A DNA stretch of 64,000 nt from Styela clava (Eukaryota): assembly GCF_964204865.1 (NCBI RefSeq), contig NC_135254.1, positions 19,344,001 to 19,408,000 of the forward strand, given 5' to 3'. Each line of letters starts with the position of its first letter. Position 1 is the stretch's first letter. Below, piece after piece: positions 28,086-57,096 of the stretch. The notes under the pieces are model-generated. The model was given only the letters and a program-made list of their open reading frames with translations, did not search any database and was not told the DNA's origin. A program made the position numbers and the translations under genes.

Positions 28086-29355
28086 GTCGACTTTTTGCTG
28101 ATTGAAGTAAAGTCGTAAATAAACAAGATAGTAGATATTTGGGAAAACACCTAATAACAAGTTAACAACGTAGGGGATGTATGCCGCACTTTAATGTGTT
28201 TTAGGCCAGCCATGGTCTTGTGTATACAACTATACATCCCGTCTTCAATGTTGATATTTACTAACTCCTGTGTTTTTGTTTTTACGGGACGAATAAACAT
28301 ACATACATACATACATTTAGAAATGGCAGAATGCTGGAATGAGAAGAAACACAACTGGAATACCGGTATCTGATTACAGCATTTTGCAACATGCTGACAT
28401 GTAGCTTATTGCTGTATTGTCTACTTCCAGACTTTTTAGTTCAGGGGTTTATATACCAGTACCGGTATCTGTATACGGTATCACAGTACTGCAGTATCAG
28501 CTTTTGGTATAGCTGTATAGGCCTAGCAATAAATTACAGAATTAACCTGCTTGTAGTGCTTGAGAAAAGTCATAGTGTGTGCCCGCTCATAGGCTCAACA
28601 GCACAAACAGAAAAAAATCATAAATCTAGTTGAACAAGGCCAGAAAGACAGACAGACTGCCGGACTGTGACAAGGCTTTAATCCTATAATTAATTTAGAA
28701 CTCTATCACATAATTTTTTTCAACTAGATACTGTCCGATAACACACAGACACATGTTACCGAATCCGATAGTGGTAAATTCAGAAAGTACGGAATTGTTG
28801 GAATTTGGTATTCTGGAAGGAAACAATTATACACATGTACACAATATTTACTCAGTAATTGACCTGTTCAACGAATAATACTGTAATATCTTTTTCTCAT
28901 TGCAACTCATTTCTTCGAAAATAGTGATATTCTATTGCAGCAGTGCTGCAGTGTTAGATATTTTGGTATTCAGGTATTGCAAGATTGGTATCAACTTTTA
29001 TTTCTTATATTTAGGCTATTATTTGCTATATTTTATTCGTGACTGTTGTAATACTGTAATAGTGTTCAATTGATGATAAAAGCTTTCAAAGGTTAGGGAC
29101 CCATATAATCATCTAAATTGTTTTAAATGAGTTTTTTTTATTATGACTGAAAATAATATTTGCCATGTAGTAGATAGGGTTTAGTAGACCAGACATTTTT
29201 CCATTTACCTTGTTTCTCATTTTTACGGCTCTTTTGAGAAAGATCAGAAAATTGCGTACTTTTAATTTGACGAAAAACTTGAAATCAATCTTTTCTGAGA
29301 TCATTCTATTTGCTTCCATGTTTTACAGACTAGTAGATAGATGCAGGTTGCGAAT

Positions 29356-32300: not shown

Positions 32301-35300
32301 AACTATACAGACTACTGTTATTGTTTCGTAGGTCTTTGTTAATGCTCATTCAAGTGGAAATAAAATGCTTTTATCTCGGCCATATCACAGCCTTTTGTGT
32401 TTAAACGAGGCATACTTTCATGACGACAAACTGTTATTCATTTTTATAAATGTATCCTTATAGGATATTCACTTTCCTTACGATTATTGTTGACCCAAAA
32501 TCTTAAATTGCTTAATATTTTAATTATATCTTCATTAACGTTATTCAAATTAATATGACCAAGGAGGCATTATAGTGTTACAAGGTACACAGCATTTTGA
32601 AACCCCTTCCTTCGAATATCCAAGCTGTATCCCATGTTGTAATTTATCGAGTTTTAATTTACCAAATTTGCATAGAACATTGAATGGAAAATAATGTTGA
32701 ACAGGAAATGCTTTACACAGCCATAAAAGATTGATAACTTCCGTTCTGTAGTATGTGTTGTTAATTCAGGATGTGGCTTCAAATTATAGTTGTACTTTGA
32801 TTACATGCCTAATATATTATAATAGCATCAAGAAGCCTATTATTACTTAGCAAGACAAGAAGGTTGACAATCATTCAAGCTTATTTTATACCTATGATTA
32901 TATCATGTTTGGAAATTATTTTTGAGAAAGACATTGTGTAGAAAATTTATAGCACAAAATGGATTTTTAACATAAAGAAGTTTTTGATGTTTGAAATATA
33001 TGTTTTTCAAATTACTATTTTTGAAATTGTATATATTTAATTATTTTATTATTCTCATTTAGAAGGCCTGATTTTAAGATTTTTATCCTTCAAAAATACA
33101 GCCTTGAACTGCATTGTGTGACGTGAGCGTCATTAAAATGTACATTGTTGTATATTGAATACCTGCGGCACTTTTACGTTGTATACTTGAATAATACTCG
33201 TAAAATACAATTTTAACTTGTTATTGCAAGTTGTATAAAATTTGAAAGCAATGTTTCGATTACCATATTATTAAAGGAGAATTTTAATCATTAAAATCAT
33301 TATTGATATTTTTGTTGCATGCTCAGTTGTGTTCAGTAATTGGTCTATGACTGATTACCTCAATGCTTTCCAAATGGTCAATATTTGTACAAAACATATT
33401 GTCATGAGCAATATCACAGTTATGACCAAGCAGCGTTGAATCATTTCTTTCTTTGATATATAAATGGAATACAGTAATATATACAAAACAGGACCAATTT
33501 GGCTATAATATGCAATATCGCCGGATGAGAACAGAACAGGCCTAAGTCACAATTTTGAGTTTTGAGAAAAACGCAAAAAAACAATTTGGAATTTTTTTAT
33601 TTTCGAATTTCTAGATATTCACACTTAGTAAAGTCCTGAGCTCTGGTTATTTTAATGTGGATGAGAATATCTTTGTAATCAATATTTTTTGGCACTTCAG
33701 CTTCAATTCCTTCTTGCTTTTTTACCCCCATAAGAAACTTTGGCCCATTCTGTTCTCAACAACTTCTGAAATTTTTTGTATGGGATGCAAGGTAAAACAA
33801 GGTGACTTAGGCCTAAGTTGCACTGAACAAATTTTTAGGGATGTAAGTTTCGGACATTTCATTTCTGATGTTCATGCCCATCATATTGGAACTGAGGACT
33901 ATCTTTTTTCAATATTTTGGGGTTTTGAGCCATGCTCTACAAGGTGGTGGTCTTGAAATCCTGAATTTCTCAATAATAAAAATTTTAGCTGGACTTAGGC
34001 CCATTCTGTTGTTAAATATTTTAGGCCTAAGTCCAGCTAAAATTTTTATTATTGAGAAATTCAGGATTTCAAGACCACCACCTTGTAGAGCATGGCTCAA
34101 AACCCCAAAATATTGAAAAAAGTCAATTTTCCAAAAATGTGACTTAGGCCCCTTCTGTTCTCATCCGGCGATATAGTTAACGTAGTTCTTGATTTGTCAC
34201 CTTGAGCATTTATTCATCAGTTTGTCAGATAAAAATTAGGTTCCACCCTGACATTGTAAGGAAAAATAGGATATTAAAAAAATAATAATTTTAATCTGAA
34301 CCATTATACATCGTCAGACTTCATGACATACAGTGATTTGTGTAAATATTTCTGCTGAACATGACCCTTTTAAAATATATTCAATATTTGATATTTCGGA
34401 ATGTATTTTGTGTGGTATATTTTTGGTTTCAGACATTACTGGCCTCGATCAATTTCACATTTTGGAGCACGAACACATCAGTCTTTCAGCCTAAGGCATT
34501 TTTACAAATTAACAAAAACATAACAACTGTTTTGCCTTTGTGCTTTAAGTTTAATTTTCTTATCATTTGCTCTTTTATTCAGTATGAATTCAAGGCTAAA
34601 GCAATCAAGAAACGAAAAGTTAATATCAGAGTATCAACAGATGGAGTTAGAGTGGTATTGCGCAAAAGAAAAAAGGTTTGTTTTAAATCATTGATCAGAT
34701 TGTACTGAATTCTCATGAAAAAAATAAGGCACTCCAGAAGTATGTGTACCAATATGGAGGTATCGGTAATTAATTTTGTTCGCCTACTATACATCAAGTT
34801 GTGTAAAGGGACTGAACCTATGGGCAGGCAGGCGGTATATTCACTTATCTAACACAGACAGTCCCCGAACTCGTGATAGAACTAAAATAGGAAAAATCGG
34901 AATATGAAATTATGGCCTAACCCTAACCTGGTACAAATACTACGGGAGTACTAATAATAATAGGTTTTTTAAGTTGTACAGTTTGTCTTTTCATCTGACC
35001 TGACTTTTTGTCTTTTTTATCATTCAATAAAGGTGTTAAATTTTGTTTCAGAAAAAAGAATGGGCCTGGGATCTGGACAGGATGTTAATTATGCATGATC
35101 CAATATACAGGTAAATATTCTTGCTGTTCAAATTCAACCTTTGAAATATGATCCATCGTCGGTGCCCTTTTAGAGGTTCAATGTACCTTGCTGATTTGAA
35201 TTTCACGTTCATGCTTAGTTCTTAGTTTCTAAAATTAAATTTCATCTTAAAATAACATTTTAGTTTTCGTGCTTGTTTTTTTTATTACTGTAGTTGTACT

Positions 35301-38300
35301 TAGTCCTTTTTGATGCTAGGCTGTATGTTAAACTTCTTCAAATAATACCAGTGAATACTGTACGAGTGGCCTAAGAAACTGCATCTGATTTGAGTATTGA
35401 TACAAGATGTGCGCTGTCAAATACCTGTCGTACACATGACATGCTCAAGAATAAACATTGTGAAACGTTACATTTAACTTGAGCCAATGTTATCTTGGCT
35501 TTTTGAAGTGAATAAACACAATCTTATATTCTTATCATACCCCCAGTAGCCTGATGTATAAATGTGCCCTGAATTGTTGTCCTAGGCAAGCAGGATTGCA
35601 ATGATCTGTAGTTTCATATTCTATTTTAATTTTCTATTATAATCCTAAATAGGGGCGCAGCCAGGATTGTTTTAGCGGGGGCATGAGGCATTCATCAATA
35701 TAACTAAAGTTGTCCATCGCTGAAAGCGAGACACCAAATTAAATTCCACCATTGTGTCTTGCCTGCCTCCCTTTATGTTAAAAATGCGATAATGCACTGA
35801 ATAAAATAGTTTTTAACCACAAAAGGATGATACTTTCACTGTAGAAGGACGTTGTTATTTATTCTAGGCAAAACACTTCAAGTTGAAAAAAATTCCAAAG
35901 TAAGAGGCTGCACCCCCGCATGCAATAATCATAGACCAATCCATCAATAAGCTTATACTAGAAAGACCCACAGCCTTACAATGTTGTGAAACAACAAAAT
36001 ATGTTACAAATAATTAACTAATATTTACACTTTACAGGATATTCTATGTCTCTCATGACTCCCATGACCTCAAGATATGGAGTTTCATCGCTCGTGATGG
36101 GCAAAGCAATGTCTTTAGATGTAACGTTTTCAAGTCACCGAAAAAGGTAAGTCCGTTCTAATGAATAGATGAAATTATTATATTTATCAAGGATATGTAA
36201 CCAGCAGCTCCTTTCAGTCAGTTGATTTTTTTATTTTAATTATTTTGCTTCATACTCGCTCTTTACTACATAGAGGGGTATTGATATTGGTCGAAACATT
36301 TTTTTTTGTTTTGACGTAGCTTAAATCCTACAATCTGGTTAAAACGGAGGTATGCCCTCATTTCTGATTGACTGGTGATATTTGGTTCCCATACAATGGA
36401 AAAGAAAAAATTTGGATTTTATATAAATGTCTGCACTTGCACTACAAATTTTATTGCGGTGTAATATTCTTATTTTCTTTTATTAGCAATTATTGAGAAT
36501 TCATTTTTTGTGGGGTAATATTGAGATTCTGGCTTTGATTGAAAAAAATAAAATTAGTATAAATAACTATTTCCTGATCGAATCCAGTATGATCTTTATG
36601 CTGATATATTGGAGCGCTATTTTTCAATCTTTCAATTTATTTCATTTGATTCACTTAAGAACTTACTTGTCATTTTTCCGTACCCAATTAACTAATATTT
36701 CTTAGAATTGTCAAGATTGTTTTTGTTTTCCCAAGTGAACCAAATAATGTTTCATTGCTGGGTTGGGCCCTAGTAATTCATGGTTGAGTTCTTGCACAAG
36801 CTGTTATGATTGGGATTGGATGAGATTTTTGTGATAAAAGTTCGTTAAATATTCTATACGCTCGACTGGCTTTGCTGACTGAACAATTTTTTACATTCTG
36901 CTTGTAAAGATGGTACAGGGTGTCCCAAAATAAATGAAACCCATCAATTCGATAACGATGTTTGATATCTGTGCAAATAATATTCGTATAATATATGTAT
37001 ATTTGTACGAGTCGCACGACCCTGGTTTAATTTTTATAACAAACTCATTTAATTCCAATTATATGTTTAAATTCATAGTCTAGTGTTAAAAATTTTTTTT
37101 TGCATTCATCTATTAAGTTAGTTGACTCTATTGACTTTTCAGCTGGAATGTCAATACATGAAAGATTCCAACACCAGAAAGTAATATTTTTAGGAAATTG
37201 CGTGGAACTCATTTGTTGTTATTGTTTGAATTTACCTCGTTCTCGAATTGTGTTTTTTGAATGGTTGAAAATACAATCGCTAGACTCAAGTGCCGGTTAT
37301 ATTCAAAATCCCCTCACTTGACACTTCCAACCTTTTCGTTTTCATAAAATTTTACTTTACAACATTGCATTGCAAATGAAGTATTTTATTTATCACCATT
37401 AACTTGTTTAATAATATGTTTTGATTTTTTAGTCTCAGGCAATGAGAGTCGTAAGGACAGTTGGCCAAGCATTTGAAGTCTGCCATAAACTCAATATAGG
37501 ACCTCCAGTGAAAAAGGATGAAAATTCAAATGATAAATTGAAAGAAATCAAATCAAGCGCAGGTAAAATGCTATTGAATCTTTTGTCTGTGATAGTAATA
37601 AATATATTCTGTCTCTATCTTAATTAAATTCTTAAGTTTTTCAATTGCATCTTGGAGTATTATATCCTTTGTGTCAGCAATCAGCATCTCTTTAGACGTC
37701 TAAGTTTGTGACTTTTGAAATATATGTATACTCTTGAAATTGAACGATGCATGAGAATTATGATTTTTGTTTATGCTAGGAAGTGATCATAGGTTCATAT
37801 GAACTCAGCAGCTGGCTCATTTTACTTGCTAGAAAATTGTGACTCAATCCCAGGTTATATCTAAGCAGTATACAGAGTCCAATAAGCTTAAAGTTTGGTT
37901 AGGGATTATGTGCGAGGATACATTGAACTGGGTAGCAGCCTATTGCCTATTTGATCATCCAAGTGTATGAAAGACTGTGGTTTGGTATGGGATTAAGTCT
38001 TACGTTATCCCGTTTCCCTTGGGATGAATATTATAATTTAAGTGTTGTCTATATCTCATTTGGTGATGTTTTTGTGATTAAGTTGGAAGCCGAATTTTCA
38101 TAATAGGGATTTAAATGTGATATTAAATATTTTGCAGTCATTTTTGGATATTTAATAGTCTTATCAAGCCGGCCGTTTTCTAACTTTACTATCATCTAAC
38201 TTCTGCTATGGCACAACTAAACTATGGTACACATGGTAATAGAGTTGAAACAATTTGCAATTAATATATTGGTATAATATTTGACAACAGCTATTATTAT

Positions 38301-41300
38301 TGTGAGAGTACACACGAATGCTTGTGCATACTGTTTTAATACAAGATTGTCTGACACTCCCAGTTTCTCTTACATACTTATGTAAACAGATATGTTTAGA
38401 TATATTCAGATATTATATATGATGCAATGTCGCAATGACAATTTTATAATCTCATGTTATGTTGTACGTCCTGAACAGCATGAGCATATATAAGTAAATA
38501 TAAGCATATATATAAGTAAATACAAGGGCAATGAGGAGAATTGAAAATTTGAGTTTAATTTATTGGTTACAATACATTTGCTTGCCTATGTACTTTGTTT
38601 GTCATGTTTTCTGTAGCATACTACAAATTTTTTTTCTAACTTCTAATTATCCCCTTTTCATTTTTTTTCAATAGATGATAAAGATCAGAGTGAAGAAACA
38701 GATAATTCAAAGCCTGATAAAACACTGGAAACAATAACAGAAAATTCAACAACTCCAAACGGAGATCTAGATGCCAAAGTAATTCCTTGTTAATTCATAT
38801 TTATTCTTCGAGTGTTCATATAAGAATCGCACACATTATATATTCCATTTTACATCGCTTTATAATCATTTATTCCAAGCCAATATTTCTTTTAAATTTA
38901 CTGTTTTAATGCTAATGTACTAATAATTAAGTTGTATCTGTCTTATCGGTTTGTCAACATGTATATAGCATTTATGTATATACTTTGTGTATAAAAATTC
39001 TGTCCTATATTCCTATGTTACATATTTACCACTCATTTAGGGTTTGAGAAATTAGGTAAGAGTTTCTTCAGTCAGGGTCGTGTCAAACTTTTCTGCTGCT
39101 CGGGGTGAATTTCTAATAATGATGCCTAGCTTCAAAAATAATTTGTAATTTATTATTGTTTGAATCATCAAACAAGCTAGAAACTCATCCCTATAACATG
39201 CTGCTCCTATTATCCCTTCTATACAAGCCCCTGGGGCCAGTCTTTCTAAGCCAAAACCACCACCAAGTAGATAACAATATAGAGAAAATATGCAAATCAT
39301 TTTTTAATTTCAGAAATCACTGTCTCTTGATGGAAAACCGCCAATAGTTTCGAAAGACGATTCAACGCCAGTGTCGCAAAATTTATCAATATCACTACTT
39401 CAATCCATCGATTCAAAAACTCCACTAAGCACTCATCATCAATTACAACTGAGTCAACAAAAAATACAACAGGCTGAAAATCAGGCTCAAATGGCTGTAG
39501 CACAGGTTAAAAATTGTCAGAGTAGCTACCGGTAATTCAAAAAGCTGTAGAATTCCTGTAGGGATTGCCAAGACTGAATAATTGGATGTGATTCCATGAA
39601 TCAGTGAAAAGTAGATTTTATTCGTACCGTTTTAACTTCCCATCTTGAATCTTGATCTTAAAATTTGTTTGAAATTTGTGACGTTTTTCTCATTTTTTCT
39701 GTAATTTTTTCGGATAATGGACTAATTTTAAAGTTATTTTTTTATCGATTTAATATTGATTTTTTCAAGATTTTCTCTAAGTATATTTTTTATTCCAGGT
39801 GCAATTATTGAAAGATCAACTTCTAGCTGAAACAAGTGCTCGTATGGAAGCGCAGGTAATGCTTTAATTTTCTATCTATCAGTGTATTTTTGTTTATCTG
39901 ATGGAAATTATGATACCGCTTAAAACATGGAAAACTGAAATGAAAAAGCAGTAATTTTGATTATACTTCCTTTATCGAATAGCAAAAATATAAAATTTTA
40001 CTTAAACCAAATTTTTTTAACATCTCTTGGGAATATGCCTATGAAATTTTGCTACTTTTGTAATATAATTTAATGTGAAATTAAATCAGTTCTGCTCAGA
40101 GATAAATTTTGAATTTGCATATTTGAAGAATGCATCTTGGCAACACATGATATTTTTCTGCTTAAAAATTTGCATAAGCGTTAATTTTTTATGCAAATAT
40201 ATGGGAAGGAAAAAATTCTCAATGATATTAAAAATAAATTAGACATTTGAATAAATCTTTAAAATAGCAAAATAACTTCGCTGCTTCTGATATCTACTAA
40301 GTTGACGTGCGATTCGAAACAGCAACAACTCAGACATTTTTAAAATTTGCTGGTATTCGGATTTAACTCCGGATTTGTATCACCATAACTTGATTTACAA
40401 CTTAAGGACTTGTGTTGTACAGAACTGGTATTCTGATACTTGGGTCCAAAAATCACCTTCAAATTCAGTAGTCATCACAGTTGTTCAAATGTTTTGCAAT
40501 AGCCTTTGTTATTCCAAACAACTTTGTTGAAGGTCTCATTTACGTCTGTGTTTTGTATCCAAATGCGACCCTCAAGGAAATCTTGTGTGGCCCGCGGAGA
40601 AGCGACACTTTTGAGTGGTATGCAGCCTGCGCAACAAGTTTTCAATTTAATCTAGTATGTGCTAGTAATTCCGATTACTTTGCGTTGCAATGCCTAGATC
40701 TGAGCTTGTGCAAAGCGAACAACGCACATCACAAGATCAATAACCAAAATTTTTGTGTCTACAACTACCAGAAAGACTATGTTAAGTGAAGGAGCAGCCT
40801 GCGGTTATATCTAGTTATTTGTATCTGACCCTCGTGTTGCAGGTCCCTCATGGTTTAGTCTATTCAAATTTCATTTTCAAGGCTCGCAATCATCAACTTT
40901 TACTTCAAAATCGAGATCTCCTTCAACAAATGACAGAACTTGTCGCAAAACTTTCGGAAGTCGAAGCCAAACTAAACAATGTAGAAATGGAAGACTCATT
41001 CTCACTTGGACTAAGTAAAATAATAGTTGATGCTACAACACCTGCCAGTGGGACTGTTGATGCATCTGGTATCATGGATACTGATATGACAAAAGTAATT
41101 CTTTTTAATTTGCCTTTTTTTATTTTACAATCAGTGCGTTGGGATGGTCGTGAGTGTTTTTTTACAGATGGTTATGCACAGTGCATTTTTTTGTATACCT
41201 TTTGCTCTGAACAAGAGCACAAACTGTCTTATTGGCTATCTCATTCATTGCTATAATATGAAACTTTCGACATTACTTATATTAAATCAGAGTAATTTTG

Positions 41301-44300
41301 TGACAAAAAATAACAGAATTTATAAAATCGTGCTCTTATGGTTCTATTTATTTATTAATTTTTTTATGTATTATTGGAACAACCATGCATCTTAATCTAC
41401 AATTATAAAGTGGATGCGCCAACATACTGTTATTGAATCACAACAATACTGCAGGTTGTCCATAATCAAGATTATCAATTTCAAATTGGTTGAATATACA
41501 TGACTTCTACATGTTCTCTGTTAAATAAAACCTGATTTAGAATACAGGGGTTGTTCATAAAATCTGGTATTAAACTTTGTGAAAAAAAAATTTATGATCT
41601 TTGTGCAACTAATTATGGCCATATAAACGTGTATTTAACGAGGTAAAAAGAAAACACTCATCAAAATGAAACCAACCTGGATAAGATATATTGAAAACTG
41701 ACTTCGTAACAACATTTTGAGATTATAACTGGAATTTATGAACACCGATATAGCATATTGCAAACTATCATTTCAGACTGTAGTGAGAATAGTACATTAT
41801 ATAATATTGACCATCCAACCGATTTAATAATTCAAGTTAAACTCCACTCTGCGGCCATGCAAGTAGATAAATAATAGGATTTTCCAGACTGGCCCAACCT
41901 ACTCCTTCAAAACAACTAACTACTAACCTTATAGTGGATTTTGTTCAACAACTTTTTTTTCAGGTCAGTCCATTCATAGATACCAGCTTATTCGCAAATG
42001 CCAACACAAGTATGCGAACTCCTGATCTATCAAAACATTCAAATGGACTTGCAGCAGCAACCACAGATACTTCAACGTCTACTATCACTAAATCAAGTAC
42101 GGCAAGCGATTCAGTTCGACTTGAAGTCAAGCATAAACAAAGAGGAGTAAATGGCAATGATGGTAAGAGGTTGAAAGACATTATATTGTAGTAGAGGTTT
42201 TTGAAAGAATTTCATTGACGTTTGAAATATTACTGTGTTAAAGTTGGTTTCCAGGAATCTGTTTAAAATTATAGCTTATTGTATGAAATAATTCAACCAG
42301 AGCTGCAAAGTTGGAGCTTAGTATGTCTATACTAGATTCTGTGTTGAAATTTAAAATTCGTCGAATCATAATTTCAAACGTCTGATGGTGATAATCGAAG
42401 TCTTTAATTAAGAAACTCAAAAATCATTAAGCTGACACGAGCATTTTCAATTATTAAAAAAGGCTTGCATATGCTACATTTTTTTCTATAAAAATTTGGT
42501 TTTGCTAGTGTTCAGAGCTGAAGTCTAAACAGAATTTCCTTTAGCTGGAGCTCAACCTGTCTTACCTGAGATTGGTGTGAATATTTTAGATTTGCAGCCC
42601 TATGACCAAGAAAGACAATAAATGATAAATTTTCTTAGTTGGGTCAGCTTCATTATGTAAATTATTTTGGTATTTTGCTTTCACATAAACTTTCTTTGTC
42701 AGGATCTGGTAGTTCTAGTTCATCCTCTAGTGATGAAGATGAGGAAGATGGTGTAGGACCAATACTACATCTTGCTAGTGAATCTGGCACTTTAAAGAAT
42801 AAGGAAATTGAAAAAAGTATCGCGTCATTGGCAAACGGAAGTGCAATTGCTGACCAAACAGAGTAAGATTAATTTATAGTTGAAAGTGAAATTGAGTTAA
42901 ATTTTAGAGTAGTTCGGAAATCTTGGATTTAAATCCTGTGGCGATGTGTCACCCACCACTTCACCCAGGGTGTTCGGGCTAGCTAATGCTTAACCGAAAA
43001 GAATATGGCCTTTATTAAACATAGTATCTTCTAATTATCAGTGCCTGGTTTCCAAGCCGTTCTAACGTAAAGATGTAATATCTCTCATTTTTCTTATAAC
43101 AATGATTATTTCTGAATGGAGGAAGGAAATTTTTAGATTTTTGCCTAAAAAGTAGAAAACCAAACCATTATTAAGTGTTTGACTTCAAACTTATTTTGTA
43201 GCAAAATTATGATATATATTCATATATGCCAAATTTTATATTGTCCCTATAGATTTAGAGTAAAAACGACATTTTTATATATTTTCTATCATGATAAATA
43301 GCAATAATTTTGATTTTGTCTGAAACAGAATATTTGAAAATCTTTAATCAAAGGCTTATTGCATACTAATGTCAGCATCAGCCATTTTTTGTGTCGTCTT
43401 TTCAGTGTTCAAAATTTAAAATAAATCAGAATTGTCTGTCTAGAACTAATTGAGTGAATCAAAAGTATCTTTGTTATCTCAAGGGACTTTGTTGGAATTA
43501 CATTTTTAATTAGGTTATCGCATTGATTGTGATTAAAGAGTGATAAAGTAAGCCTTTATGTTCACAATGCATATTACATTATATTCAATTACAGGGCTTT
43601 TGAAATATGTCAGCACTAACTCTTTTATTATTTACATTATTATTTATTTTTATTATCTCCAAATTAATATTTCCAAATATGAAATATTCGAAGTATTCTA
43701 AATTAGGTGACTATCAACTAATGACATAAGAGGTCGATGCATATTGAATGAGTTTGAATTTGGAAGTGAGGAAAAGTTGCAATAAATAGTGATTTGATTG
43801 GTCTCCATTTTAACATTTTTCAGAAATTAAATTCTGGCCTTTTTGGTCATACTGGAAGACTTCTATCAAGGAAAAACTGTTCTAATTCACAAAAAATAGA
43901 ATATCAAATATAACCAATTTTCAAAACTATTGGAATATTCGATATATTCATTTTAGGCATCCTTGCCTGCTCTTGACTTTGCAGAGAAAATCATTTGGGT
44001 AGGCAATACCGAGCTGTGAAGATTCAGGTCTGTCCCAATAATAGTAGCCACATCACTTTATATATTATATTGTTAGATATCAGTGGCTTCTTGTATAGGG
44101 CTTTGTTCAGAGCAATAGGCTTGAATAAGCGCCATATACTAATATTGACGCGCCAGAATTGTGTGTACAAATATGGAGGTAACTAATTTCGTTCACCTAC
44201 TATAACTATCAATTTGGATAAGGGAAACCTATGGACATGGTCACATGGGGTATATTCACTTTGATGACAGTAACTCAAACAGGTCCTGAACTCGTAATAG

Positions 44301-47300
44301 AACTATAATAAGAAAATCGGAATAAAATTATGACCCAACTCTAACCTGGTAAACATACTATGGGAGTACCCAAAGATTAGGATAATACCTCAGCCATTTT
44401 AAAAATGGCAATTGTCTCTCTTATATACCTATTTGAACTGATGCCAAAGTATTGATTAAAATATTGTCACTGGGATCTTTTGGCCTGGTAATGTTGACCT
44501 TCCGATCTTCTACTGCTGTAAATTATTAATGTCTGTACCTGACGTAATGCAGGTGGTAGTCTTACCTGGCAGGCAGTTAATTTTAAATTTATTATAAAGT
44601 GAATTGGATCGATGCTCACTTGGTAAAATTTGAGGTGCTCCCGTAGTATGTGTACCAGGTTAGGTTGAGGCCATAATTTTATTCCAATTTTCCATATTTT
44701 TGTTCTATTACGAGTTCGTGAACTGTCTGTGTTAGTCAAGTGAATACACCCCCTGCCCATTGTAATCAGTCACTGTACACAACTTGATGTAAAGTAGGCA
44801 AACAAAATTTTTTTCCTCCATATAGGTACACATACTTCTGTAGCGCAAATTTGATATTACTAGATTATTTAAATTTTAAAACAGCGATTCCCAGCCTCCG
44901 TATTTAGACTAAGAAGATATATTTTTGGCTCTGAATAGAAATTTTACAAAGTTAAATTTTTTTTTTTTTTTTTTTTGGTTGTGTGTGTACTTGTGTTCGT
45001 TTGTTGCTATTTCTTTTAGATATTCCCCTGTTAGTGTTTTATGCATATACCGCATTTAGCCCAGAGGAAACTCAAAATTTATGTTCCATAATATGCAATT
45101 ACCTTTTCACTGCCTTTATCTATAAAGAATATTTATAATAACGCGAATCATTTATAAAAAGTTTGAGAGAGCATACAAATCATTTTTTTAAAATGATGTG
45201 GTATTATACTATCTGGATATAGCTTTACATTGTTCTACTTTATTTATATTCAAAAAATAAATTCAAAATTATTATTAACACCTGGGTATAGTTGATTTGG
45301 TTCTGTGGAAGATAAGAAACTGATAAAAAGCTAATGAGTAATTTGATTTTGAATTTTAAATTATTTTTCAACAGGCATTTCACCCTATAGCTCAATATGT
45401 ATCTCAATCATCTATTTTAATTGAAGCATACATTAGACCAGGGTTCCCCAAACTTTTTAGGCCGCGGTCCCCTGTTTGTAAATTTTATTTTTGACAGACC
45501 CCTAGGCCCTATCTTATGCCATATCAATTTTTATGCCTAACAATGGATATCGTCCGCCTTGATCAATCATAAAAGATTCAACTGCTTTTTAATTGAAATC
45601 AATCATTAAAGATTGATCTATCGTTGCACAACCCCTGTACAGTCATCATGGACCCACAGAGGTCTGCGTATCCCAGTTTAGGAAACCCTGCGAAACACTG
45701 TATGTCACTGCTCTATGCCATTGTCATTGATACTATGTCATTGATACTAATATTTTGTTCCAATTGTTATTGCTCAGTTTTTTTATATAACAGAAACACA
45801 TCAATCTGGACTTCTGGACTGGTCACTCCCGAGAGAGCACTGAGTGGTAAAGGATATCAACATCCTCAATCCACAACAATGAGTTTTGAAGATATCTCAA
45901 TATCAACTACTGTGAATGACTCAAATGCTAGGTGAGATTTCATCTTTAGGAATTTATGTTGGATGTATTAAAAAAAAAGACTGAAATAAGCACAACGTTA
46001 AGAAGATATACGAATTGTGTGTTCTTTAATATATGTATGTAAAATATACAGGGTGAGTCGAAAATTGGGGTGACAGTTAATAAATGAATTAGATAATTAT
46101 TAATAACTGTTGTCTGTTACCCTTCTTTTGGCGCACCCTGTTTATTAGGATAGGAAATACATATTTATCCCAGGGAAGTAGAAAGCCGATAAGACGACTC
46201 AATCATATGGCAACCACAGCCTTTTGTTCGGTTACCAGTCCATGTCGGGTATGAGATTAGTTGGCCAGTTATTTGTTTTCGGAATCATGGACTCAAAGGT
46301 GGGGGAAGCTGTAACCTACCAGTGGTTATATGAGCCACCCTACGGCGGCAAGGATTTCAGCAGTTCTCTTGCCCATGGCTATCTCCGCATGGCATTTGAA
46401 CCTGCAAACCTGCGCAGGGAAATCAGAGATGCGGCGGTGAGCGTATTTTTAACGATTAGCACTATGCGCCACACCGCCTAGACTTTCATAGACTTTTAAA
46501 TTGTAAGAATTTGGGGATTGAAAATATGGATACTTATGGGCTGTTCAACTCTTAATAATCTTTTAGCTTTGGAGTGGAATTTAGTCATCAAAATGAACTT
46601 TGTAATTGTTTCACAAATAGTAATCCAAAAACATGTTTTCAGCAATGGTTACACTTTGTCACCTATATTTACCGTTGGTTCAAGTGCCACAGAGGCTCAA
46701 AGCAGTTTCCAACATTTTTCTATTACCGAAGCTGACCTGTCTCTGAAAATTGATGATACACCGAAAAGTTCCATGAAGTTTTCTCAAATGAAGAAGTCTT
46801 TTTCCACCAGTGCAGACATGCAAGATAAGGTTATTTGTTTATTGACTTCTGTATTACATTTTATATTACATGCTCTGAACAATGCCTTATACTAGGGGTG
46901 GCCAACATGTCGATCGCCATGTCTCGAGTAGTCGATCGTATATGATTTTGAATAGACATAACGACATGTCTAAAAGGTATTTGTGTCCAACCAATATTAA
47001 AACATAAAATAAACCAGTCAAAACCCACACATTTTGTGTGTGCAATCTTGCGAGGGCTTTTTAAGTTCGAAGCTCTATTTCAACTAAGACCTATCTAGGA
47101 GCGGTATTGTCAAAAATTTCCGACACAATCCGTAACCGCAATATATGACAAATCCTATCCGGAAATCGTTTCAAACGTTTCATGGTTTCATTTATTGCCC
47201 AGTTATTATTAAATATTTAGTTTCACAAACTAGATTCTAAGGTAAACTTGATTTCAATCGAGGCGAGGTAGCAGTAGTATGGCTAACAGTATTAGTTTCA

Positions 47301-50300
47301 ATGTTTTGGTGGCTTGAAGAGAAAGCACATTTTGTCTTTGCAGTTGGAAATTTAATATCTATACATTTTTGTGTGTGACAATATTATCGATCAGTCGTTT
47401 GCAAGATATTTTGAAAAATTTTGACGATTCAGCCAAATACAGGTTGGTTCACCCCTGCTCTATACAAGTAATCACTGCTAGGTATAGTTATGAAGACCGG
47501 GATCTTTCCGATCGGCATTGCCTACCCAATTTATATAACTCTGCTTGAGGTGGTAGGCATGGGATTTGAACCTGAGATTTTAATTTATGAATCTGCAGAA
47601 TCTAGCCTCGTCCGGGTGCAAAACTCAATTCGGCCGAATGCAGAGATATCTATTTTGTGTCTGTAAAAATTGATTCTGAAAATTCTTAAACATCTAAAAT
47701 TTTGGAAAACCGAAGAATATGAAATAAAACAAATAATCACTTTAAAAGGCTTTTTAAGATCAGGGTTGAATTTTATCTGGTTGGTGTATTCCATGGAGAA
47801 AATTTCCAAGGAAGGAAATTTCTGAGGAAGGATTTTCCTGGTTCTGTCTGTGTTTATACACTTAATCTTTCGTCTTCAGCCATGATCATATAATCTTAAT
47901 TTGAAGATTTCAACTTATTGAGTGTTGCATTTCCAAGATTTTCAATTCTAATCAATTATAAAAAATTCTTATAGTTAACATTAAAAATCTCATTTATTAG
48001 GAAAAACTCCTTCCATCTACGTCTCATAGCAGTGCAGAACTGTCTTCACAACAACGAAAATCAAGCAGGAGTTTCATTAAGTGGACTAAAGTATCAGAAA
48101 AAGAAAGTCCATTGGAAGATTCATTTCAATCCCAATTGTAAGTTAATTATGAATGTTCAATATGTTGTTTAGAACTTTAGAATAATTTTTCATCAAGATT
48201 CAGGTTTTGTTCGAAAATAGTGATTGCTTAAGTGGGTGTTTATTTGTTGTTTTTGATTAAAAATATTTTGAAACTTATATTATAGGTCGCCGTTCTTTAT
48301 ATAATATAGATCTTGATAACTACCAAAGAAGTTTTGATATTTTATATAGAGCATGTTGCTCCAAACAAGGCCCTATACAGACAGCCAAGACAATATGGAA
48401 TGAGCAACTTTTTTTGGGAGCATCAGAATCTTTCAGGTTCAACATGGCAATTTATTATACCTTGGGTTTAGGTGGTGGACGTGGGATTTGAATCAGAGAT
48501 GTTAGCCTACGATGCCAAATTGCCAACACAGTCAAGTCTAACGCTTTAACCACTAGCGCCTAGTAATTTAATTCTGCTTTTATGCAATAACTTCATTCGA
48601 TTTTTCCAACATATTATATAAAAGGTATGTCCGAAAAAAAATTGAGTCTATTTTGACGATAATGTTTTAAAAAAATATTAGATAATATAAATTTCTATTT
48701 CTGTGTAGATATTGTTTAGTCCAAAACATTTGAAATTGAAATCAGTATCTGCTACCGCAAAATAACCCTTTAAATATAGACATCCCTAGAGACAATGCCA
48801 GATCCTTTTTTGTCCATAAAGTCCCTTGATAGTTAATATGCTACAGAACAATTGTTACACGATATATAATTTCTCTGGGGAATTCAACTTGACAAGACAA
48901 TGAAGTGTAGGATTTTATATTTGTCCTTTGGGAAAGAAAGGCATTAGAGATGGCCTAATCTTAATGCTTATTGGCTGGATTGGGGAATATTTAACTAGTT
49001 TCTGATGAATGAAATTGTAACTTGGCAATTTGTGATAAAACCAGTTTCACTGTCGCATAGTTTGTTTTTATCTTCCTAAATTGAAAAAAAAAAATTTATG
49101 AATATTATGCCAAAAAGATTCAAGAATCTCAAATCATTAGGATCAAACATTCCCTACCAAGTGTTCACAGACTAGATAGCATTGGATTTTATATATTTTA
49201 TTTCATATATATTTTTTTATATTTTCATATGCTGCTTATTTACACTTTTCACTCTCAGCAAGGTCCTATACAAGTAGCCACTGATATATATATAAGAAGC
49301 TGCTCTTTTTAGAAGAGCCGTATTCTGCCAAACCTGTTCGGCGATCTTAGTCTGATTTTCTTCATATTATATTTTAAATGCTTGGCTATTAATTGAACGT
49401 TCATAAAATGATATGCAACAATGCAAGCATAGCCTTGTAAACTTTCTTCATTTCTGAACTTTTTCAGCGAATCGGATCTTTCATTGCTAATACCATAGCA
49501 TGCGACCGACGCTTTGTGCAATATTTTTGTCAGGTAAAAACAGAGATTGAACTAATGGGTGTTGAATGAATAATGAATAAAAACCTCAGCAATTTATATT
49601 AATGATATTAACGATTAAATTCATAGTCATATTTACAATCATTGATTATTACAAGATTGGTCAATTTTAAATTCGAATTAAATTTTTTGCAATGATTTTA
49701 GCCAATGATCTGTAGTGAAAAAAAAAGTTGAGTTTTCTAACTTGATTTTTATTGAGTAATTTATTTTCTATTGACATTATACCAAATTTATTTAAAGTTT
49801 GATGTGCTCCACATTTTTATTTTACAGAAGGCTTACTTTTACTAATACAATACTATTTTTGATCACTTTTAATTGGGCACGTTTTTTGTATCATCATTAG
49901 GTGTGATATCTGTGGTGGTGACTAGTTGAGTAAAGTAGTAAACCTATTGGTCAGCTAAAGCAGGGTTCACCAAACTTTTTGTGATGCGGACCAATGTTCC
50001 CTCTAATATTTTGGAGTATGTGTGCGCAGAAATTTTGGTGTGTGCGCACTTTTTTGGAAATGACTAATATTTGTGCAAAAACCAATGAAGAAATTTTGGC
50101 GTTCTAACCGGGTAATAAGTGGGCCAACAACAAACTTTCTCAACCTGCCAACCGAGCACATTGTTACATTACATCAAAATACGTCTGTGCGCAGTAAATC
50201 TATACGTGTGCGCAACCTCTGAAAGCTGTGTACGCGTGCACACGCGCACACCTTAGAGTGAACACTGATGCGGACCCACGTTTGTGAATCTTGATTTTCA

Positions 50301-53300
50301 TGGCCCCCTTTTCTAATGCCGTACCAATTTCTGTGCCAAATTAACGAGGAAAGGTAATGTTTTATTTACAACATAAAAACACAAACTACATTAATGTGGA
50401 GGATGAGTTTGCTTTTCCCTACTCAATTTTCTGAACAATTTGTGATAAACGAACTCTTGGGTTCGACTCTGTGGCAAGTCTTGACCTGTGTTTTGTCATC
50501 ATATTGGTGTCAGAGTCAGAATTATTTTATTTGTCACTTCAATTAAAAAAAAAATCCAACAATAAACTGTATGTAATAAGTACAGTATCAAAATGACAGG
50601 TGTTGTGATTGTGAAGGATGGATAGCTCTGTCATCTAGTCTACAGCACCTTGGTGAGAGCTGAAAATGCTGCCTTACACATGTAGGTTGTTGCAAATGGC
50701 AATAACATTTTCTTTCTGACACTGACAGCAGCGATGGATATTCGTCCGCAGTGTTTAACCCAAAAATATGAAATGACTTTTTGATTGAAAACAATGATAA
50801 AAGATCAAGCAGACTCTCCGTATCGTTGCGAACCCCTATGCAGTTATCAAAGACCCTCTGTGCAATCATCACGAACCTCCAAGAGTCCGCAGACCCCAGT
50901 TTAGGAAACCCTGAGCTAGAGTGATATATTGTTTTTACTTTAATCTGTAGCAAACAATGGCTGTTGAATATAAGAGTGCATTTATTTGCAACATGTTATT
51001 TCTCCCAAACTAAAAAATCCATCTCATGAAATAACCTTAACCTGAATGCTTTTGAAAATTCAGCAAGAGCAATATACCGTATTTCCCGGCGATTAAGTCT
51101 ACCCGGTAAATAAGGCGAGGCCCGTTTTAGAGCCTGTAAAAATGGGACCTCAGTAAAATCGCATCAATATCGGAATCTCAAATTACCATACAACGGCTTC
51201 TAAGCGGCCACTACAATTGTGCAATGGTTAAAATACCATATTTTCAAAAAGTGATTTCACTATGAATTTTAGATAGGATGACTACTAATACCGTAGTTTG
51301 ATGATGGTATAATTTTTGGCAATATTAACTTCAACATCGAAAAGTAACTAACTTTTACCAATCAGTTTATATACGCATTTATATATAAACATTTACTGTT
51401 TGTTGAATATGAGTTGTCCATATCGACAAGTGGAATAATTGTACGTTGGACCAAATTTCCAAGAAACCATCAGATTTGGAGTAAAATATTAGGCTTCATG
51501 GAGTCTCGGAAAGTTCGAAAAATGGAAAAGTGATGGCTTGCAGAGAATAAACGCTCTTCATCAATTTCTTCTGTAAATGAAAAAGTTCAAGAGTTTGGTA
51601 ATTTAGGAGAAAGGCAATTCTCTGTATCGCCCAACAGCAAATAACTAGAAAGATTTAGTTCCATGAATCATAGATCTCCTTCAATAACAATGATTTTAAA
51701 ATTTTCTAATTTTGTGAGATTAAAATATAATTATTAATCATTGCTATTTAAATAAAAATTTTAAAAATCAAAAATATAAATTTTTTTATAATTTGTTAAT
51801 CTCGATTATTTGCATTAAAAATTAAAAGATTAAAATGTGCATAAATGAATGTAATAAATAAATGATTGGCATATGGCATCAAATTGCAGAACTATATCTA
51901 TCTCACTGTTTGTGCCATTATGCAAATAGGTATTCTCTGATTGATAATCGACTCGACTACTAACTATGAAAAAAGAAAGTTTTGTGTTTGGGGTATGATC
52001 GTTTGTATTTTTATATAGGTGTGACAATGGTTTTATTTTTGTCAATTACGGTATATATGATTTTAAGAAATTTTGATAAATTAAAAAAAATACTGCAATA
52101 TATAAACTATTTGTTATCTAAATACATTAATATGTTTGTTGATGAGTAGAATATGTCAGATGATTCTGTTGAAAATATTGCATTTTTCTTTGTAATGTAA
52201 AACATTTTATTAATAATTGAATTTATGTGATTAATCATTTTTGTCTACTTCACTACTAAATATAGTTCTGTTTGGAATTAAGCAGAGGACTATTTCTTCA
52301 AAATATTAATTCATTTATTACAAAATGTTTTATCGAATTTGCTATAGTTTGATAGTTTTTCTATTGCATCATTTTTTCGTGCTAATACCATATTATTATT
52401 TACTTATAAAATGATCGTTTACATCAGAATCTTATGAGAATCTTCATATTTTCAGGCCGGATTCTAGCAACCAATCATCTGATTCTGTTTTGACGCCTCG
52501 ACTCGATCCACCACCAAGAGTAAAACGTGCCACATCCAGTAGAGCACTTCCAGATTACCGACCTCGACCTGATACTCAGTTGAGTGATGGTGCAGCCAGC
52601 CCTTCACATAGCTCTACTAGGACTATTACAAGCCCAAAATTAGTCGACACCAGTGATTCCGATTTAGAAGTACCGTCAAAGCTAGCGAAATATCAAGCTC
52701 AAGGAGTAAAGCTTTCACAAAGCACTCATAATTATGGAAGCGATCCACTGTTATCACGTTTTGATCCACTGCTTTCAAAGTCAAAATCTTTTGATCACCA
52801 ATCTCCGACACCTGTTCCTAAAGTATCTTCGGAATCATTTACTACAGTGTTATCTCCGGTACAAGATGTTGGACAGCAGAATCCGTTTTTGTATATAACC
52901 CCTCAAACTCCAGAAAGTTCGAAGTATTGTAAACCTGTAAATCCAGAAGAACTTTCAAGGTCTTACTCTGATTTGGAACAGTCTTCTACGCTATACGTTT
53001 CGGGGATTTTTAGTTCCCCGGAAGAATATGAAGCCAGATTACGCTACGAACCTTTGCGCAAACAACAAGCAGCAGAGTGGCACCGGTCCGCAGAAAACAC
53101 AGAAACTCGCCTTAATTCTAGTTTCCATGCTGGTGACCAGAGTTCCAATGCTTCTAATAAAAAACAAATTCACAATGATGCTGGAGGACCGTTACCAGTA
53201 TATCGCACATATAGTGATTTGACATCATCTTTAACTCCGATTAAAAATATCCCTAAACCCACTGACAATACCAGTCTCAAGACTATAGGATCATATAATT

Positions 53301-53812
53301 CCAATTCTAGTAATAATAATATTTTAACACAAGATGATACGGATTCAAAGAAAATGTTTATGAATAGTAAGTCATTGCAGTTGAACTCTGACACGGGCCG
53401 TGGTGTATTCAAGGATCCACCTTCTGCTGATGGTAACGTTTCACTTTTAGATGATTTATTTATTCATGAAATTGATGAAACCTCAAATGAAAGTGCCATT
53501 TCGCAACCAACAAAATCGGGCACCGATGGGGCTTTATTACAAAAAGTAAAATCCTCGGCTGTAGTTTTTAATTCAAATCCATCCATGGTACGTATCACCA
53601 ACCCTCTTGAAACATTGCACGAAGAATTTTCTAAAGCCCATATTGCTGCTGAACCAATTCAAACTGGTAATCATGCTATTGCAGGATTGGTTAACGATAT
53701 CAACCAGATATCTGTTAGTTCGACCAACTCAGATTCTGGTGTTTCAGGGTGTGGAGGTATCATGAAGGCTGAACAGGAGTCTAGGGATTCGTCAGATCTT
53801 GGTGATCATTGA
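29356..53812 (+). CDS. NOS1AP: NOS1AP/CAPON (PTB-domain adaptor) orthologue, about 1107 aa, 16 coding exons
   Basis: Phase-consistent GT-AG exons: 29356-29472, 30207-30278, 34583-34675, 35052-35110, 36038-36146, 37433-37562, 38675-38778, 39314-39505, 39799-39855, 40882-41094, 41964-42162, 42703-42862, 45794-45931, 46643-46829, 48001-48137, 52456-53812 (3324 nt). The peptides [92 protein letters not shown] and [28 protein letters not shown] match vertebrate NOS1AP. Exons 11-15 rest on splice signals and phase only. Confidence 0.93.
33519..34170. mobile_element. Non-autonomous TIR DNA element (possibly Sola1-type) in NOS1AP intron 2
   Basis: TIR CGCCGGATGAGAACAGAA..GGCCTAAGTCACA / TGTGACTTAGGCC..TTCTGTTCTCATCCGGCG, flanked by ATAT on both sides (fits a 4-bp AWWT TSD). 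Confidence 0.75.
33903..34122. repeat. Perfect inverted repeat: 99-bp arms, 22-nt spacer
   Basis: 33903-34001 is the exact reverse complement of 34024-34122. Confidence 0.95.
34729..34951 (+). mobile_element. ~220-bp MITE (CCTAAC-containing family), copy 1
   Basis: Imperfect ~23-bp TIR GCACTCCAGAAGTATGTGTACCA / TGGTACAAATACTACGGGAGTAC and an internal CCTAACCCTAACC. Homologues lie at 44149-44369 and 44635-44847. Confidence 0.8.
40575..40830 (+). mobile_element. Degenerate copy of the 11471-11790 hAT MITE
   Basis: It shares GCGGAGAAG, TGGTATGC.GC, CACAAGATCAATAACCAA and CAACTAC.AGAAAG.CTATGTTAA with that element. Confidence 0.7.
44149..44847. mobile_element. Two inverted copies of the ~220-bp CCTAAC MITE (44149-44369 +, 44635-44847 -)
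   Basis: Both match 34729-34951 (GAACTCGT.ATAGAAC.A.AATA.GAAAAT.GGAATAAAATTATG.CC.AAC..AACCTGGTA.ACATACTA.GGGAG.AC). Confidence 0.8.
45439..45690. mobile_element. hAT MITE related to 49961-50913
   Basis: Termini CAGGGTTCCCCAAACT / CCCAGTTTAGGAAACCCTG. Confidence 0.75.
46047..46142. mobile_element. Tiny Tc1/mariner-type MITE
   Basis: TACAGGGTG...GGGGTGACAG / CTGTTACCC...CACCCTGT inverted termini. Similar TACAGGGTGTC ends occur at about 9125 and 36914. Confidence 0.55.
46146..46478 (-). mobile_element. tRNA-derived SINE, copy 1
   Basis: On the - strand the 5' head is GGCGGTGTGGCGCATAGTG (A box), followed by GGTTCAAAT (B box) and a (ATCCT)n tail. Homologues lie at 59626-59961 and about 62190-62598. 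Confidence 0.8.
46893..47457. mobile_element. hAT-type MITE
   Basis: Termini TAGGGGTGGCCAAC / GTTGGTTCACCCCTG, GTCGATCG subterminal repeats, and a degenerate TSD CCTTATAC/CTCTATAC. Confidence 0.7.
48465..48562 (-). mobile_element. Head of a second tRNA-derived SINE family
   Basis: The - strand reads GGCGCTAGTGGTTAAAGCG (A box) and GATTCAAATCCC (B box-like), with a spacer too long for a tRNA. A similar B-box segment lies at about 47545-47575. Confidence 0.55.
49961..50913 (-). mobile_element. Internally deleted hAT (Buster) transposon carrying a nested insertion
   Basis: TIR CAGGGTTCACCAAACT / AGTTTAGGAAACCCTG and TSD AGCTAAAG/AGCTAGAG. The - strand remnant EYPSLL../[19 protein letters not shown] (~50650-50745) is the hAT dimerisation domain. 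Confidence 0.85.
49992..50267. mobile_element. Nested 276-bp hAT MITE
   Basis: TIR CAATGTTCCCTCTAA / TTAGAGTGAACACTG, GTGTGCGCA subterminal repeats, and a perfect TSD ATGCGGAC (49984-49991, 50268-50275). Confidence 0.92.
51075..52052. mobile_element. Degenerate Tc1/pogo-type element
   Basis: TA-CCGTATTTCCC...TAAG left end and a weak ...ATTACGG-TA right end. Confidence 0.4.
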
Positions 53813-56661: not shown

Positions 56662-56740
56662 ACACAAGTCTCATTTTTATCACCGGGCAAGGAATGGCAT
56701 ATTATGGGTAGAGGAAAGAAGAATTACTCCTTGAGTGTTA

Positions 56741-57096
56741 CCGTGTTTCCCCGAAAATAAGACTGGGTCTAATTTCAATTTTCTTCCGAAAATTAACACT
56801 AGGGCTTATTTTCGTGGGATGTCTTATATTTTCATTTAGCAAAATCAAAATTACGAGATTGTCAAATATACAAAATATGAAAACCGATACCCATTTACTT
56901 AACACGTAACACGTTTTTATTCAAAATAACTGCAAAACGTAATAATCTATCATTTAAAACGTGTAGGAGAGATTTTTTGCTATCGACTAGGTCAAAAAAA
57001 ATTCGCGTTAATGTCTGGGTCTTTTTTAAGGGGGGGGGGCTTATTTTAAACTCATTTTTTGAATTCAGGTGAGGTCTTATTTTCGGGGAAACACGG
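56741..57096. mobile_element. pogo/Tigger-like MITE
   Basis: Perfect 23-bp TIR CCGTGTTTCCCCGAAAATAAGAC / GTCTTATTTTCGGGGAAACACGG, preceded by TA, with internal CTTATTTT repeats. Confidence 0.85.

What the first reader, a model, noticed from the sequence alone, without database searches (positions are those of the whole stretch)
52456..53812. NOS1AP without the PDZ ligand but with a C1orf226-like motif: the long form may be ancestral
Seen: the model is about 1107 aa and ends ...SSDLGDH*, not a hydrophobic PDZ-binding end. The last exon begins [20 protein letters not shown]. Established (from recall): canonical human NOS1AP is about 500 aa and ends in -EIAV. C1orf226 lies immediately downstream of it and contains FPRLDPPPPITRKRTPRAL, and extended NOS1AP isoforms lacking the PDZ motif exist. 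Inference: NOS1AP and C1orf226 were one ancestral chordate gene, the nNOS-binding tail is a later addition, and [11 protein letters not shown] is an uncharacterised conserved linear motif (SH3/WW-type ligand).
Basis: partly seen in the sequence, partly recalled or inferred. Interest (0 to 1): 0.75.

Follow-up and report, generated by a model that had tools for sequence, protein, structure and literature searches.

The report
Sea-squirt NOS1AP with long non-PDZ tail
This is the large last coding exon of a sea-squirt gene that looks like the adaptor NOS1AP; it gives the protein a long floppy tail instead of the short end that docks on nitric oxide synthase, much like a long form already known in mammals.

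Summary
Window 52456-53812 (+) is a real 452-codon coding exon. It reads ...[20 protein letters not shown]..., ends SSDLGDH*, and is the longest open frame in the window. It lies downstream of PTB-domain exons of a NOS1AP-like gene at 29.3-37.6 kb.

My table of 15 coding exons has GT-AG at every intron and matching phases, about 1,094 codons. The exon has no in-frame ATG before codon 314, so it must be spliced to an upstream coding exon.

The tail has one detectable relative among 1.84 billion representatives, an unnamed 517-aa protein at 35-39% identity. Six short islands are conserved between the two, and PR[LI]DPPPRV[KR]R is one of them; "RAL" is not kept. AlphaFold2 predicts disorder apart from one helix.

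The DUF4628 model does not recognise the exon. No tool returned a C1orf226 sequence, so the claimed shared motif stays untested.

No EIAV-like end is encoded in 37.6-57.3 kb. The NOS1AP-C1orf226 long isoform of mammals is already published. The "ancestral single gene" reading is plausible, not shown, and not found in print. Verdict: an ordinary gene and a modestly interesting evolutionary lead.

The parts
52456..53812 (+). Terminal coding exon (1 base completing a Leu codon, 451 codons, then TGA). It encodes a Ser-rich tail (17% Ser) predicted to be disordered.
52493..52537 (+). Conserved island 1, [15 protein letters not shown].
   Evidence: 11/15 identical to P0001. PPPR and RxxS fall in the same alignment columns.
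52550..52579 (+). Conserved island 2, [10 protein letters not shown].
   Evidence: 7/10 identical
52745..52789 (+). Conserved island 3, [15 protein letters not shown].
   Evidence: 11/15 identical
53018..53104 (+). The only confidently predicted helix (exon aa 188-216). It contains island 4, [20 protein letters not shown] (nt 53027-53098), the best conserved block.
   Evidence: 20/25 identical. 10-residue block means 62 (aa 181-190) and 79 (aa 191-210), DSSP helix 188-216.
53102..53140 (+). Conserved island 5, [13 protein letters not shown].
   Evidence: 11/14 identical
53417..53470 (+). Conserved island 6, [18 protein letters not shown], with an LxxLF / DLF pattern.
   Evidence: 13/18 identical. 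LDDLF falls in the same column in both sequences.
48001..48137 (+). Predicted preceding exon. Acceptor ttattag|, donor |gtaagt. It ends with 2 bases (TT) that form Leu with G at 52456.
   Evidence: Prediction only, no RNA evidence.
29341..37562 (+). PTB (PID) domain exons of the NOS1AP-like gene: 29341-29472, 30207-30278, 34583-34675, 35049-35110, 36038-36146, 37433-37562.
   Evidence: PF00640 PID at E=2.3e-6 for the 36.0 kb exon and E=0.029 for the 37.4 kb exon. Best PDB match is the GULP1 PTB domain, E=0.0064. Splice sites.
38675..46829 (+). Predicted middle exons: 38675-38778, 39314-39505 and 40882-41094 (Gln-rich, coiled-coil-like by eye), 41964-42162, 42703-42862 (Ser/acidic run), 45794-45931, 46643-46829.
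   Evidence: GT-AG sites and matching phases. No Pfam hit for the 39.3 kb and 40.9 kb exons. No conservation or RNA evidence.

Best explanation
The stretch is the last and by far the largest coding exon of the single NOS1AP/CAPON-like gene of this tunicate genome. The gene encodes an N-terminal PTB domain, a Gln-rich middle part, and about 640 residues of Ser-rich, mostly disordered sequence. The last 452 residues of that come from this exon.

The tail most likely works as a scaffold of short linear motifs. Six conserved islands are embedded in fast-evolving disorder: a PR[LI]DPPPRV[KR]R..S proline/basic island, RPRPD, SRFDPxLxKSKS, one amphipathic helix ([13 protein letters not shown]), LNSSxHAGDQ, and SLLDDLF.

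The protein ends in a non-hydrophobic, non-conserved C-terminus, so it would not dock in a PDZ pocket the way vertebrate NOS1AP (-EIAV) docks on nNOS. In function it resembles the published mammalian long isoform NOS1APc, which is NOS1AP spliced into C1orf226.

Shown: the exon is real and conserved, the PTB exons lie upstream on the same strand, splice phases are compatible, and no EIAV-like end is present. Inferred: that all these exons are joined in one mRNA, that the islands are binding motifs, and that the tail is homologous to C1orf226.
For: - Real coding exon: (465-codon open frame; 0/2000 shuffles stop-free).
- Conserved: 1 hit among 1,835,955,588 representatives, E=2e-51; 35-39% identity, 167/425 aligned pairs identical, six islands.
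- PTB exons upstream.
- 15 exons, all GT-AG, all phases fit.
- The first in-frame ATG is at codon 314 of the open frame, after five of the six islands, and a TGA closes the frame at 52412-52414. The conserved part therefore cannot be translated without an upstream coding exon.
- Exon 1 and the last exon are each single copy in the genome.
- Disorder: AF2 mean pLDDT 39.5, 400/451 residues below 50, one helix at 188-216.
- No PDZ-type end: -LGDH here and -TGSE in P0001, with C-termini that do not align well. 0 of 720 plus-strand open stretches in 37600-57300 end in E[ILV]AV or [DE].[AILV]V.
- Mammalian precedent: PMC12660744 and PMC11607453 (passages).
Against:
- The NOS1AP identity of the PTB exons rests on a generic PID hit plus my recall of the NOS1AP N-terminal signature. 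No tool returned a named NOS1AP (searches were blank).
- The middle exons have no conservation support.
- With two sequences only, the 'islands' are weakly defined.
Confidence: 0.7

Rival explanations
1. The exon belongs to a separate downstream C1orf226-like gene, or to an independent transcript with its own promoter and small first coding exon inside the 4.3 kb intron. The NOS1AP-like gene would then end earlier.
For: - In mammals C1orf226 is also transcribed on its own (PMC12660744, introduction: multiple independent transcripts).
- Read-through of the donor at 48138 gives an immediate stop and a C-terminus ...EDSFQSQL, which has an S-x-L class I PDZ-ligand form.
Against: - The exon has no ATG before codon 314 and needs an upstream coding exon anyway.
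- The nearest well-formed exon upstream (48001-48137, |gtaagt) has exactly the complementary phase.
- A stop right after a GTAA donor in this phase is automatic and needs no biology.
Confidence: 0.15
2. The exon is the NOS1AP tail, but the tail is a lineage-specific, fast-evolving disordered extension of tunicates. It would be unrelated by descent to vertebrate C1orf226, and the proline motif resemblance would be chance or convergence.
For: - DUF4628 (PF15429) finds nothing in the exon, its first 100 aa or P0001 at E<=10. In the whole genome its only match (E=1.09) is a Lys/Arg-rich ORF elsewhere.
- Exhaustive phmmer finds only one relative and no vertebrate protein.
- A profile search found only P0001 itself among 8000 scored candidates.
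- In the motif-region search, 30 word-sharing candidates were found and none reached E<=10.
- The atlas look-alikes are generic disordered proteins scoring <=0.83.
- 'RAL' is not conserved even between the two relatives.
Against: - The position is the same as in mammals: a non-PDZ tail spliced after the NOS1AP middle region.
- Disordered tails routinely fall below HMM detection while keeping short motifs.
I could not check it.
Confidence: 0.3

Closest known systems
Mammalian NOS1APc, the 'intergenic' NOS1AP-C1orf226 (Nos1ap-Gm7694) splice isoform
   Same: Both have the PTB domain of NOS1AP at the N-terminus and a long alternative C-terminal region that lacks the PDZ-binding end. In both, the tail is encoded downstream of the NOS1AP middle exons (PMC12660744, abstract, introduction and discussion read; PMC11607453, passages).
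   Different: - In mammals the tail comes from two coding exons annotated as a separate gene, and it coexists with a canonical -EIAV isoform. Here it is one 1.36 kb exon, and no EIAV-type alternative was found.
- Sequence homology of the tails was not demonstrated.
- The mammalian partners (Scribble, YAP, KANK1) are untested here.
Canonical vertebrate NOS1AP/CAPON
   Same: A Dab-like PTB (PID) domain is encoded by several small exons at the 5' end. A Gln-rich middle region was seen by eye.
   Different: The canonical protein ends in ...DDEIAV, which binds the nNOS PDZ pocket (PMC5350102, passage). This model ends in ...SSDLGDH and is about twice as long.
   Same: Only the genomic position relative to NOS1AP exons, plus the recalled proline motif.
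   Different: The family model gives no match at E<=10 to the exon or to its relative.

Membership tests
NOS1AP/CAPON | N-terminal PTB/PID domain | tested here: met
   PF00640 at E=2.3e-6 (window 36030-36137) and E=0.029 (37433-37567). Searched exon by exon; exons 1-3 alone gave no hit.
NOS1AP/CAPON | Orthology to named NOS1AP proteins (N-terminal signature) | tested here: inconclusive
   No named NOS1AP was returned (blank). The PDB holds no NOS1AP PTB; the best match is GULP1 at E=0.0064. The resemblance of exons 1-6 to NOS1AP is from my recall only.
NOS1AP/CAPON (canonical isoform) | C-terminal PDZ ligand -E-I-A-V | tested here: not met
   The model ends -LGDH. 0 of 720 plus-strand open stretches in 37600-57300 end in E[ILV]AV or [DE].[AILV]V (44 masked bases left out).
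NOS1APc-type long isoform | PTB exons and non-PDZ tail joined in one mRNA | not testable with these tools
   Splice sites and phases fit and the exon lacks its own start codon.
C1orf226 / DUF4628 | Match to the family profile PF15429 | tested here: not met
   0 families at E<=10 for the exon, its first 100 aa and P0001. The own-genome scan's only match lies elsewhere, at E=1.09.
C1orf226 / DUF4628 | Shared PRLDPPP...R..RAL motif | not testable with these tools
   No C1orf226 sequence could be obtained. The E-value cap is 10 and all three searches are used. Among the two tunicate-type sequences the conserved part is PR[LI]DPPPRV[KR]R..S.R; 'AL' is not kept.
SH3 / WW ligand motifs | Canonical consensus ([RK]xxPxxP, PxxPx[RK], PPxY) | tested here: not met
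   None is present in either sequence. Only PPR/PPPR (group III WW-type pattern) is conserved in the same columns. The patterns are recalled consensus forms.

The most novel reading that the evidence does not exclude
The mammalian 'intergenic' NOS1AP-C1orf226 product is not a read-through oddity but the ancestral gene. On this reading, the common ancestor of tunicates and vertebrates had a single gene encoding the PTB domain plus a long disordered tail that opened with PR[LI]DPPP..R and had no PDZ ligand. The nNOS-binding -EIAV end arose later in vertebrates through use of an internal donor and alternative terminus. C1orf226 would then be an annotation split of one gene, and the proline/basic island a linear motif more than 500 million years old with an unknown reader.
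Probability: 0.4. Interest if true: 0.6.

Novelty: new member of a known kind. Interest (0 to 1): 0.4.

Why it matters
NOS1AP is a disease gene for QT interval, schizophrenia and nephrotic syndrome. A 2025 paper (PMC12660744) showed that the long NOS1AP-C1orf226 isoform predominates in kidney, and that a variant was misread as benign because only the canonical transcript was considered.

If the long form is the ancestral architecture, the C1orf226 exons should be treated as integral NOS1AP exons. The few islands conserved since the tunicate split would then be the first places to look for partners and pathogenic variants. As it stands, this window provides a consistent gene model and candidate motifs, not proof.

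Tried and rejected
- Motif-region search (exon aa 1-60): 30 word-sharing candidates, none at E<=10. I did not pursue it, so the candidates were never seen.
- Exon 1 (44 aa) against the protein collection: no candidate.
- Two-sequence profile: only P0001 itself among 8000 scored.
- Atlas, whole exon: generic disordered look-alikes at <=0.83, with no DUF4628 row among those shown. Atlas, exon 1: no usable hit.
- PDB: nothing for exon 1; GULP1 and ARH PTB domains for the 36.0 kb exon.
- The DUF4628 hit at L001 is rejected as chance: E=1.09 in a Lys/Arg-rich ORF.
- P0001 carries no name and is known from 2 contigs only.
- Papers. 'RLDPPP' anywhere: 0 papers. 'DUF4628': 0. 'C1orf226' with 'ancestral': 0. 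NOS1AP with Ciona: 7 papers hold both terms and 6 were listed; judged by title only, none is about the tunicate gene. One search was badly framed and told me nothing.
- Papers not held: PMC2262962 (DYC-1), PMC5123869 and PMC4456437 (the first NOS1APc papers). What they say about invertebrate tails or conserved motifs is therefore unseen.
- Supplements are closed. Figs S1-S4 and Note S2 of PMC12660744 (isoform repertoire, junction peptide) may bear on the motif, and I did not see them.
- A PDZ class I reading of ...FQSQL after intron retention is set aside as an automatic consequence of a GTAA donor in that phase.
- I built no joined (spliced) protein and ran no search or fold with one. Exons were searched one by one, and the length is a sum of exon lengths.
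Full report
WHAT IS THERE. At 52455/52456 a polypyrimidine tract and AG (...catattttcag|G) open a frame that runs without a stop to TGA at 53810-53812. The peptide reads (L)[39 protein letters not shown]... and ends ...[11 protein letters not shown]. The exon starts 12 codons before 'LTPRL'. The 465-codon open stretch is the longest in any frame of the 64 kb window, and 0 of 2000 shuffles of the exon remain stop-free. The window has 29-38% G+C in 2-kb windows and contains no N.

THE GENE AROUND IT. PTB-domain exons lie upstream on the same strand. Pfam PID (PF00640) matches the exon at 36.0 kb (E=2.3e-6) and the one at 37.4 kb (E=0.029). The best solved structure for the former is the GULP1 PTB domain (E=0.0064).

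From splice-site scans I drew up a table of 15 coding exons:
- 29341-29472
- 30207-30278
- 34583-34675
- 35049-35110
- 36038-36146
- 37433-37562
- 38675-38778
- 39314-39505
- 40882-41094
- 41964-42162
- 42703-42862
- 45794-45931
- 46643-46829
- 48001-48137
- 52456-53812

Every intron is GT-AG, and at every junction the leftover bases add up to a whole codon. The 13-codon difference is unresolved.

That this is NOS1AP rather than another Dab-like PTB adaptor rests on my recall of the NOS1AP N-terminal sequence. No tool returned a named NOS1AP (searches were blank). Exon 1 and the last exon are each single copy in the assembly, so there is one such gene and one such tail.

IS THE EXON PART OF THAT GENE? 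Three things from the sequence say yes.
- The frame is closed by TGA at 52412-52414, and the first in-frame ATG is codon 314 of the open stretch (nt 53354). That is after five of the six conserved islands, so the conserved part needs an upstream coding exon.
- The nearest well-formed exon upstream, 48001-48137 (ttattag| ... |gtaagt), ends with two bases (TT). With G at 52456 these make a Leu codon.
- In the only relative found, the open frame likewise runs upstream of the conserved part into non-matching sequence. That is what a large non-first exon picked up by an ORF caller looks like.

Transcript evidence is missing. The look-up of sequencing runs listed 15 runs. Thirteen hold at least half of the sampled words of the exon, and none is on record as RNA. 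Nine are guessed to be RNA, with a share of 0.70-0.84. The junction therefore stayed unchecked.

RELATIVES OF THE TAIL. An exhaustive phmmer scan of 1,835,955,588 representatives gave exactly one protein at E<=0.001. This is P0001: 517 aa, E=2.1e-51, unnamed, known from 2 contigs. BLASTP gives 155/437 identities. The MAFFT alignment gives 167/425 identical pairs.

Identity is concentrated in six islands:
- TPR[LI]DPPPRV[KR]R..S (11/15)
- P[DE][YF]RPRPD.Q (7/10)
- P..SRFDP.L.KSKS (11/15)
- [20 protein letters not shown] (20/25)
- LNSS.HAGDQ (11/14)
- P.S.DGN.SLLDDLF..E (13/18)

Its 'RAL' end reads 'RGK' in P0001. The extreme C-termini (-SSDLGDH and -DQTTGSE) are not conserved, and neither is hydrophobic.

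AlphaFold2 on the two-row alignment gives mean pLDDT 39.5, with 400 of 451 residues below 50. There is one helix at residues 188-216, with 10-residue block means of 62 to 79 across aa 181-210, and it coincides with island 4. The composition is 17% Ser. This is a disordered tail with short conserved motifs.

THE C1orf226 QUESTION. Pfam DUF4628 (PF15429) gives no match at E<=10 to the exon, to its first 100 residues or to P0001. Run over the whole assembly, the family's only match (E=1.09) lies 5.5 Mb away in a Lys/Arg-rich ORF and is chance.

A search restricted to exon residues 1-60 found 30 proteins sharing the required short words, but none scored E<=10, so none was shown. A two-sequence profile recovered only P0001 among 8000 scored candidates. 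The atlas offered only generic disordered proteins.

No tool gave me a C1orf226 sequence, and sequence from memory is not admissible. The claim that C1orf226 carries the same motif is therefore untested here. If the recalled string is right, a shared run of seven residues in a comparison fixed in advance by gene position would be hard to put down to chance. That is why I keep the homology reading at roughly even odds.

The motif fits neither SH3 consensus ([RK]xxPxxP, PxxPx[RK]) nor PPxY. Only a PPR-type pattern and a following R-x-x-S are conserved in register, along with LxxLF in island 6. The patterns are recalled consensus forms.

THE PDZ LIGAND. Rat and mouse NOS1AP end in a nine-residue peptide finishing -EIAV. 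The authors state that the C-terminal region aligns from fish to mammals (PMC5350102, passage). In this window, 0 of 720 plus-strand open stretches of at least 8 codons between 37600 and 57300 end in E[ILV]AV or [DE].[AILV]V. On the minus strand the counts were 0 and 1 of 741. The 44 masked bases were left out.

Reading through each donor gives no such end either. The read-through of 48137 ends ...FQSQL, but a stop right after a GTAA donor in that phase is automatic. A canonical nNOS-type end is therefore not encoded here. Other kinds of PDZ ligand, or an exon outside the window, are not excluded.

WHAT IS KNOWN.
- A splice product joining the 5' part of NOS1AP exon 10 to two coding exons of the neighbouring C1orf226/Gm7694 was described in rat. 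It lacks the PDZ-binding end, is the predominant isoform in human and mouse kidney, and causes podocytopathy when disrupted (PMC12660744; abstract, introduction passages and discussion read).
- The same isoform, NOS1APc, binds KANK1 partly through the C1orf region (PMC11607453, passages). It associates with phosphorylated YAP (PMC5320711, passages).
- C1orf226 'follows the NOS1AP gene' (PMC9576154, passage).

None of the parts I read discusses invertebrates or ancestry. 'C1orf226' with 'ancestral' finds 0 papers, 'DUF4628' finds 0, and the motif letters find 0. The first NOS1APc papers and the DYC-1 paper are not held, and supplements are closed, so I cannot say the idea is absent from print.

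HOW IT MOST LIKELY WORKS. The PTB domain anchors the protein to its partners. In mammals these include Scribble, according to the papers cited above. The long disordered tail presents a handful of short conserved motifs and one helix to further partners. The end of the protein cannot act as the canonical nNOS PDZ ligand. This is inference from anatomy and from the mammalian long isoform. Only the anatomy is shown.

VERDICT. The feature is an ordinary gene whose architecture matches a known mammalian isoform. The evolutionary reading (one ancestral gene, PDZ end added later, an old proline/basic motif) is reasonable and apparently unpublished. It rests on one untested recalled motif and on two sequences, and the family-level test that could be run was negative.

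Noticed in passing
window 33903-34001 and 34024-34122: A perfect 99-nt inverted repeat (100% complementary, 22 nt between the arms) lies inside intron 2 of the NOS1AP-like gene. It could be a hairpin-forming element (MITE-like) or an assembly artefact.
   Followed up: partly
window 48130-48146: If the donor at 48138 is not used, the frame stops at once and the protein would end ...EDSFQSQL, which has an S-x-L class I PDZ-ligand form. This is probably just the automatic TAA of a GTAAGT donor in this phase.
   Followed up: no
window 37425-37440: Two in-frame acceptors lie 6 nt apart (tttttag|TCTCAG|GCA). They could add or drop Ser-Gln at the start of the last PTB exon.
   Followed up: no
window 21804-22814 (-): An intronless 337-aa rhodopsin-family GPCR ORF (PF00001, E=8.7e-18) lies upstream of the NOS1AP-like gene.
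   Followed up: partly
window 11720-12628 (-) and 15758-16609 (-): Two tandem copies of an EamA-type (SLC35G-like) transporter gene. The intact 283-aa copy matches PF00892 at E=3.2e-28. The other is split into two ORFs.
   Followed up: partly
window 45624-45700 and 50781-50924: Intronic open stretches share a similar peptide-level string (...PSLGNP...). This suggests copies of one interspersed repeat in introns of the gene.
   Followed up: no
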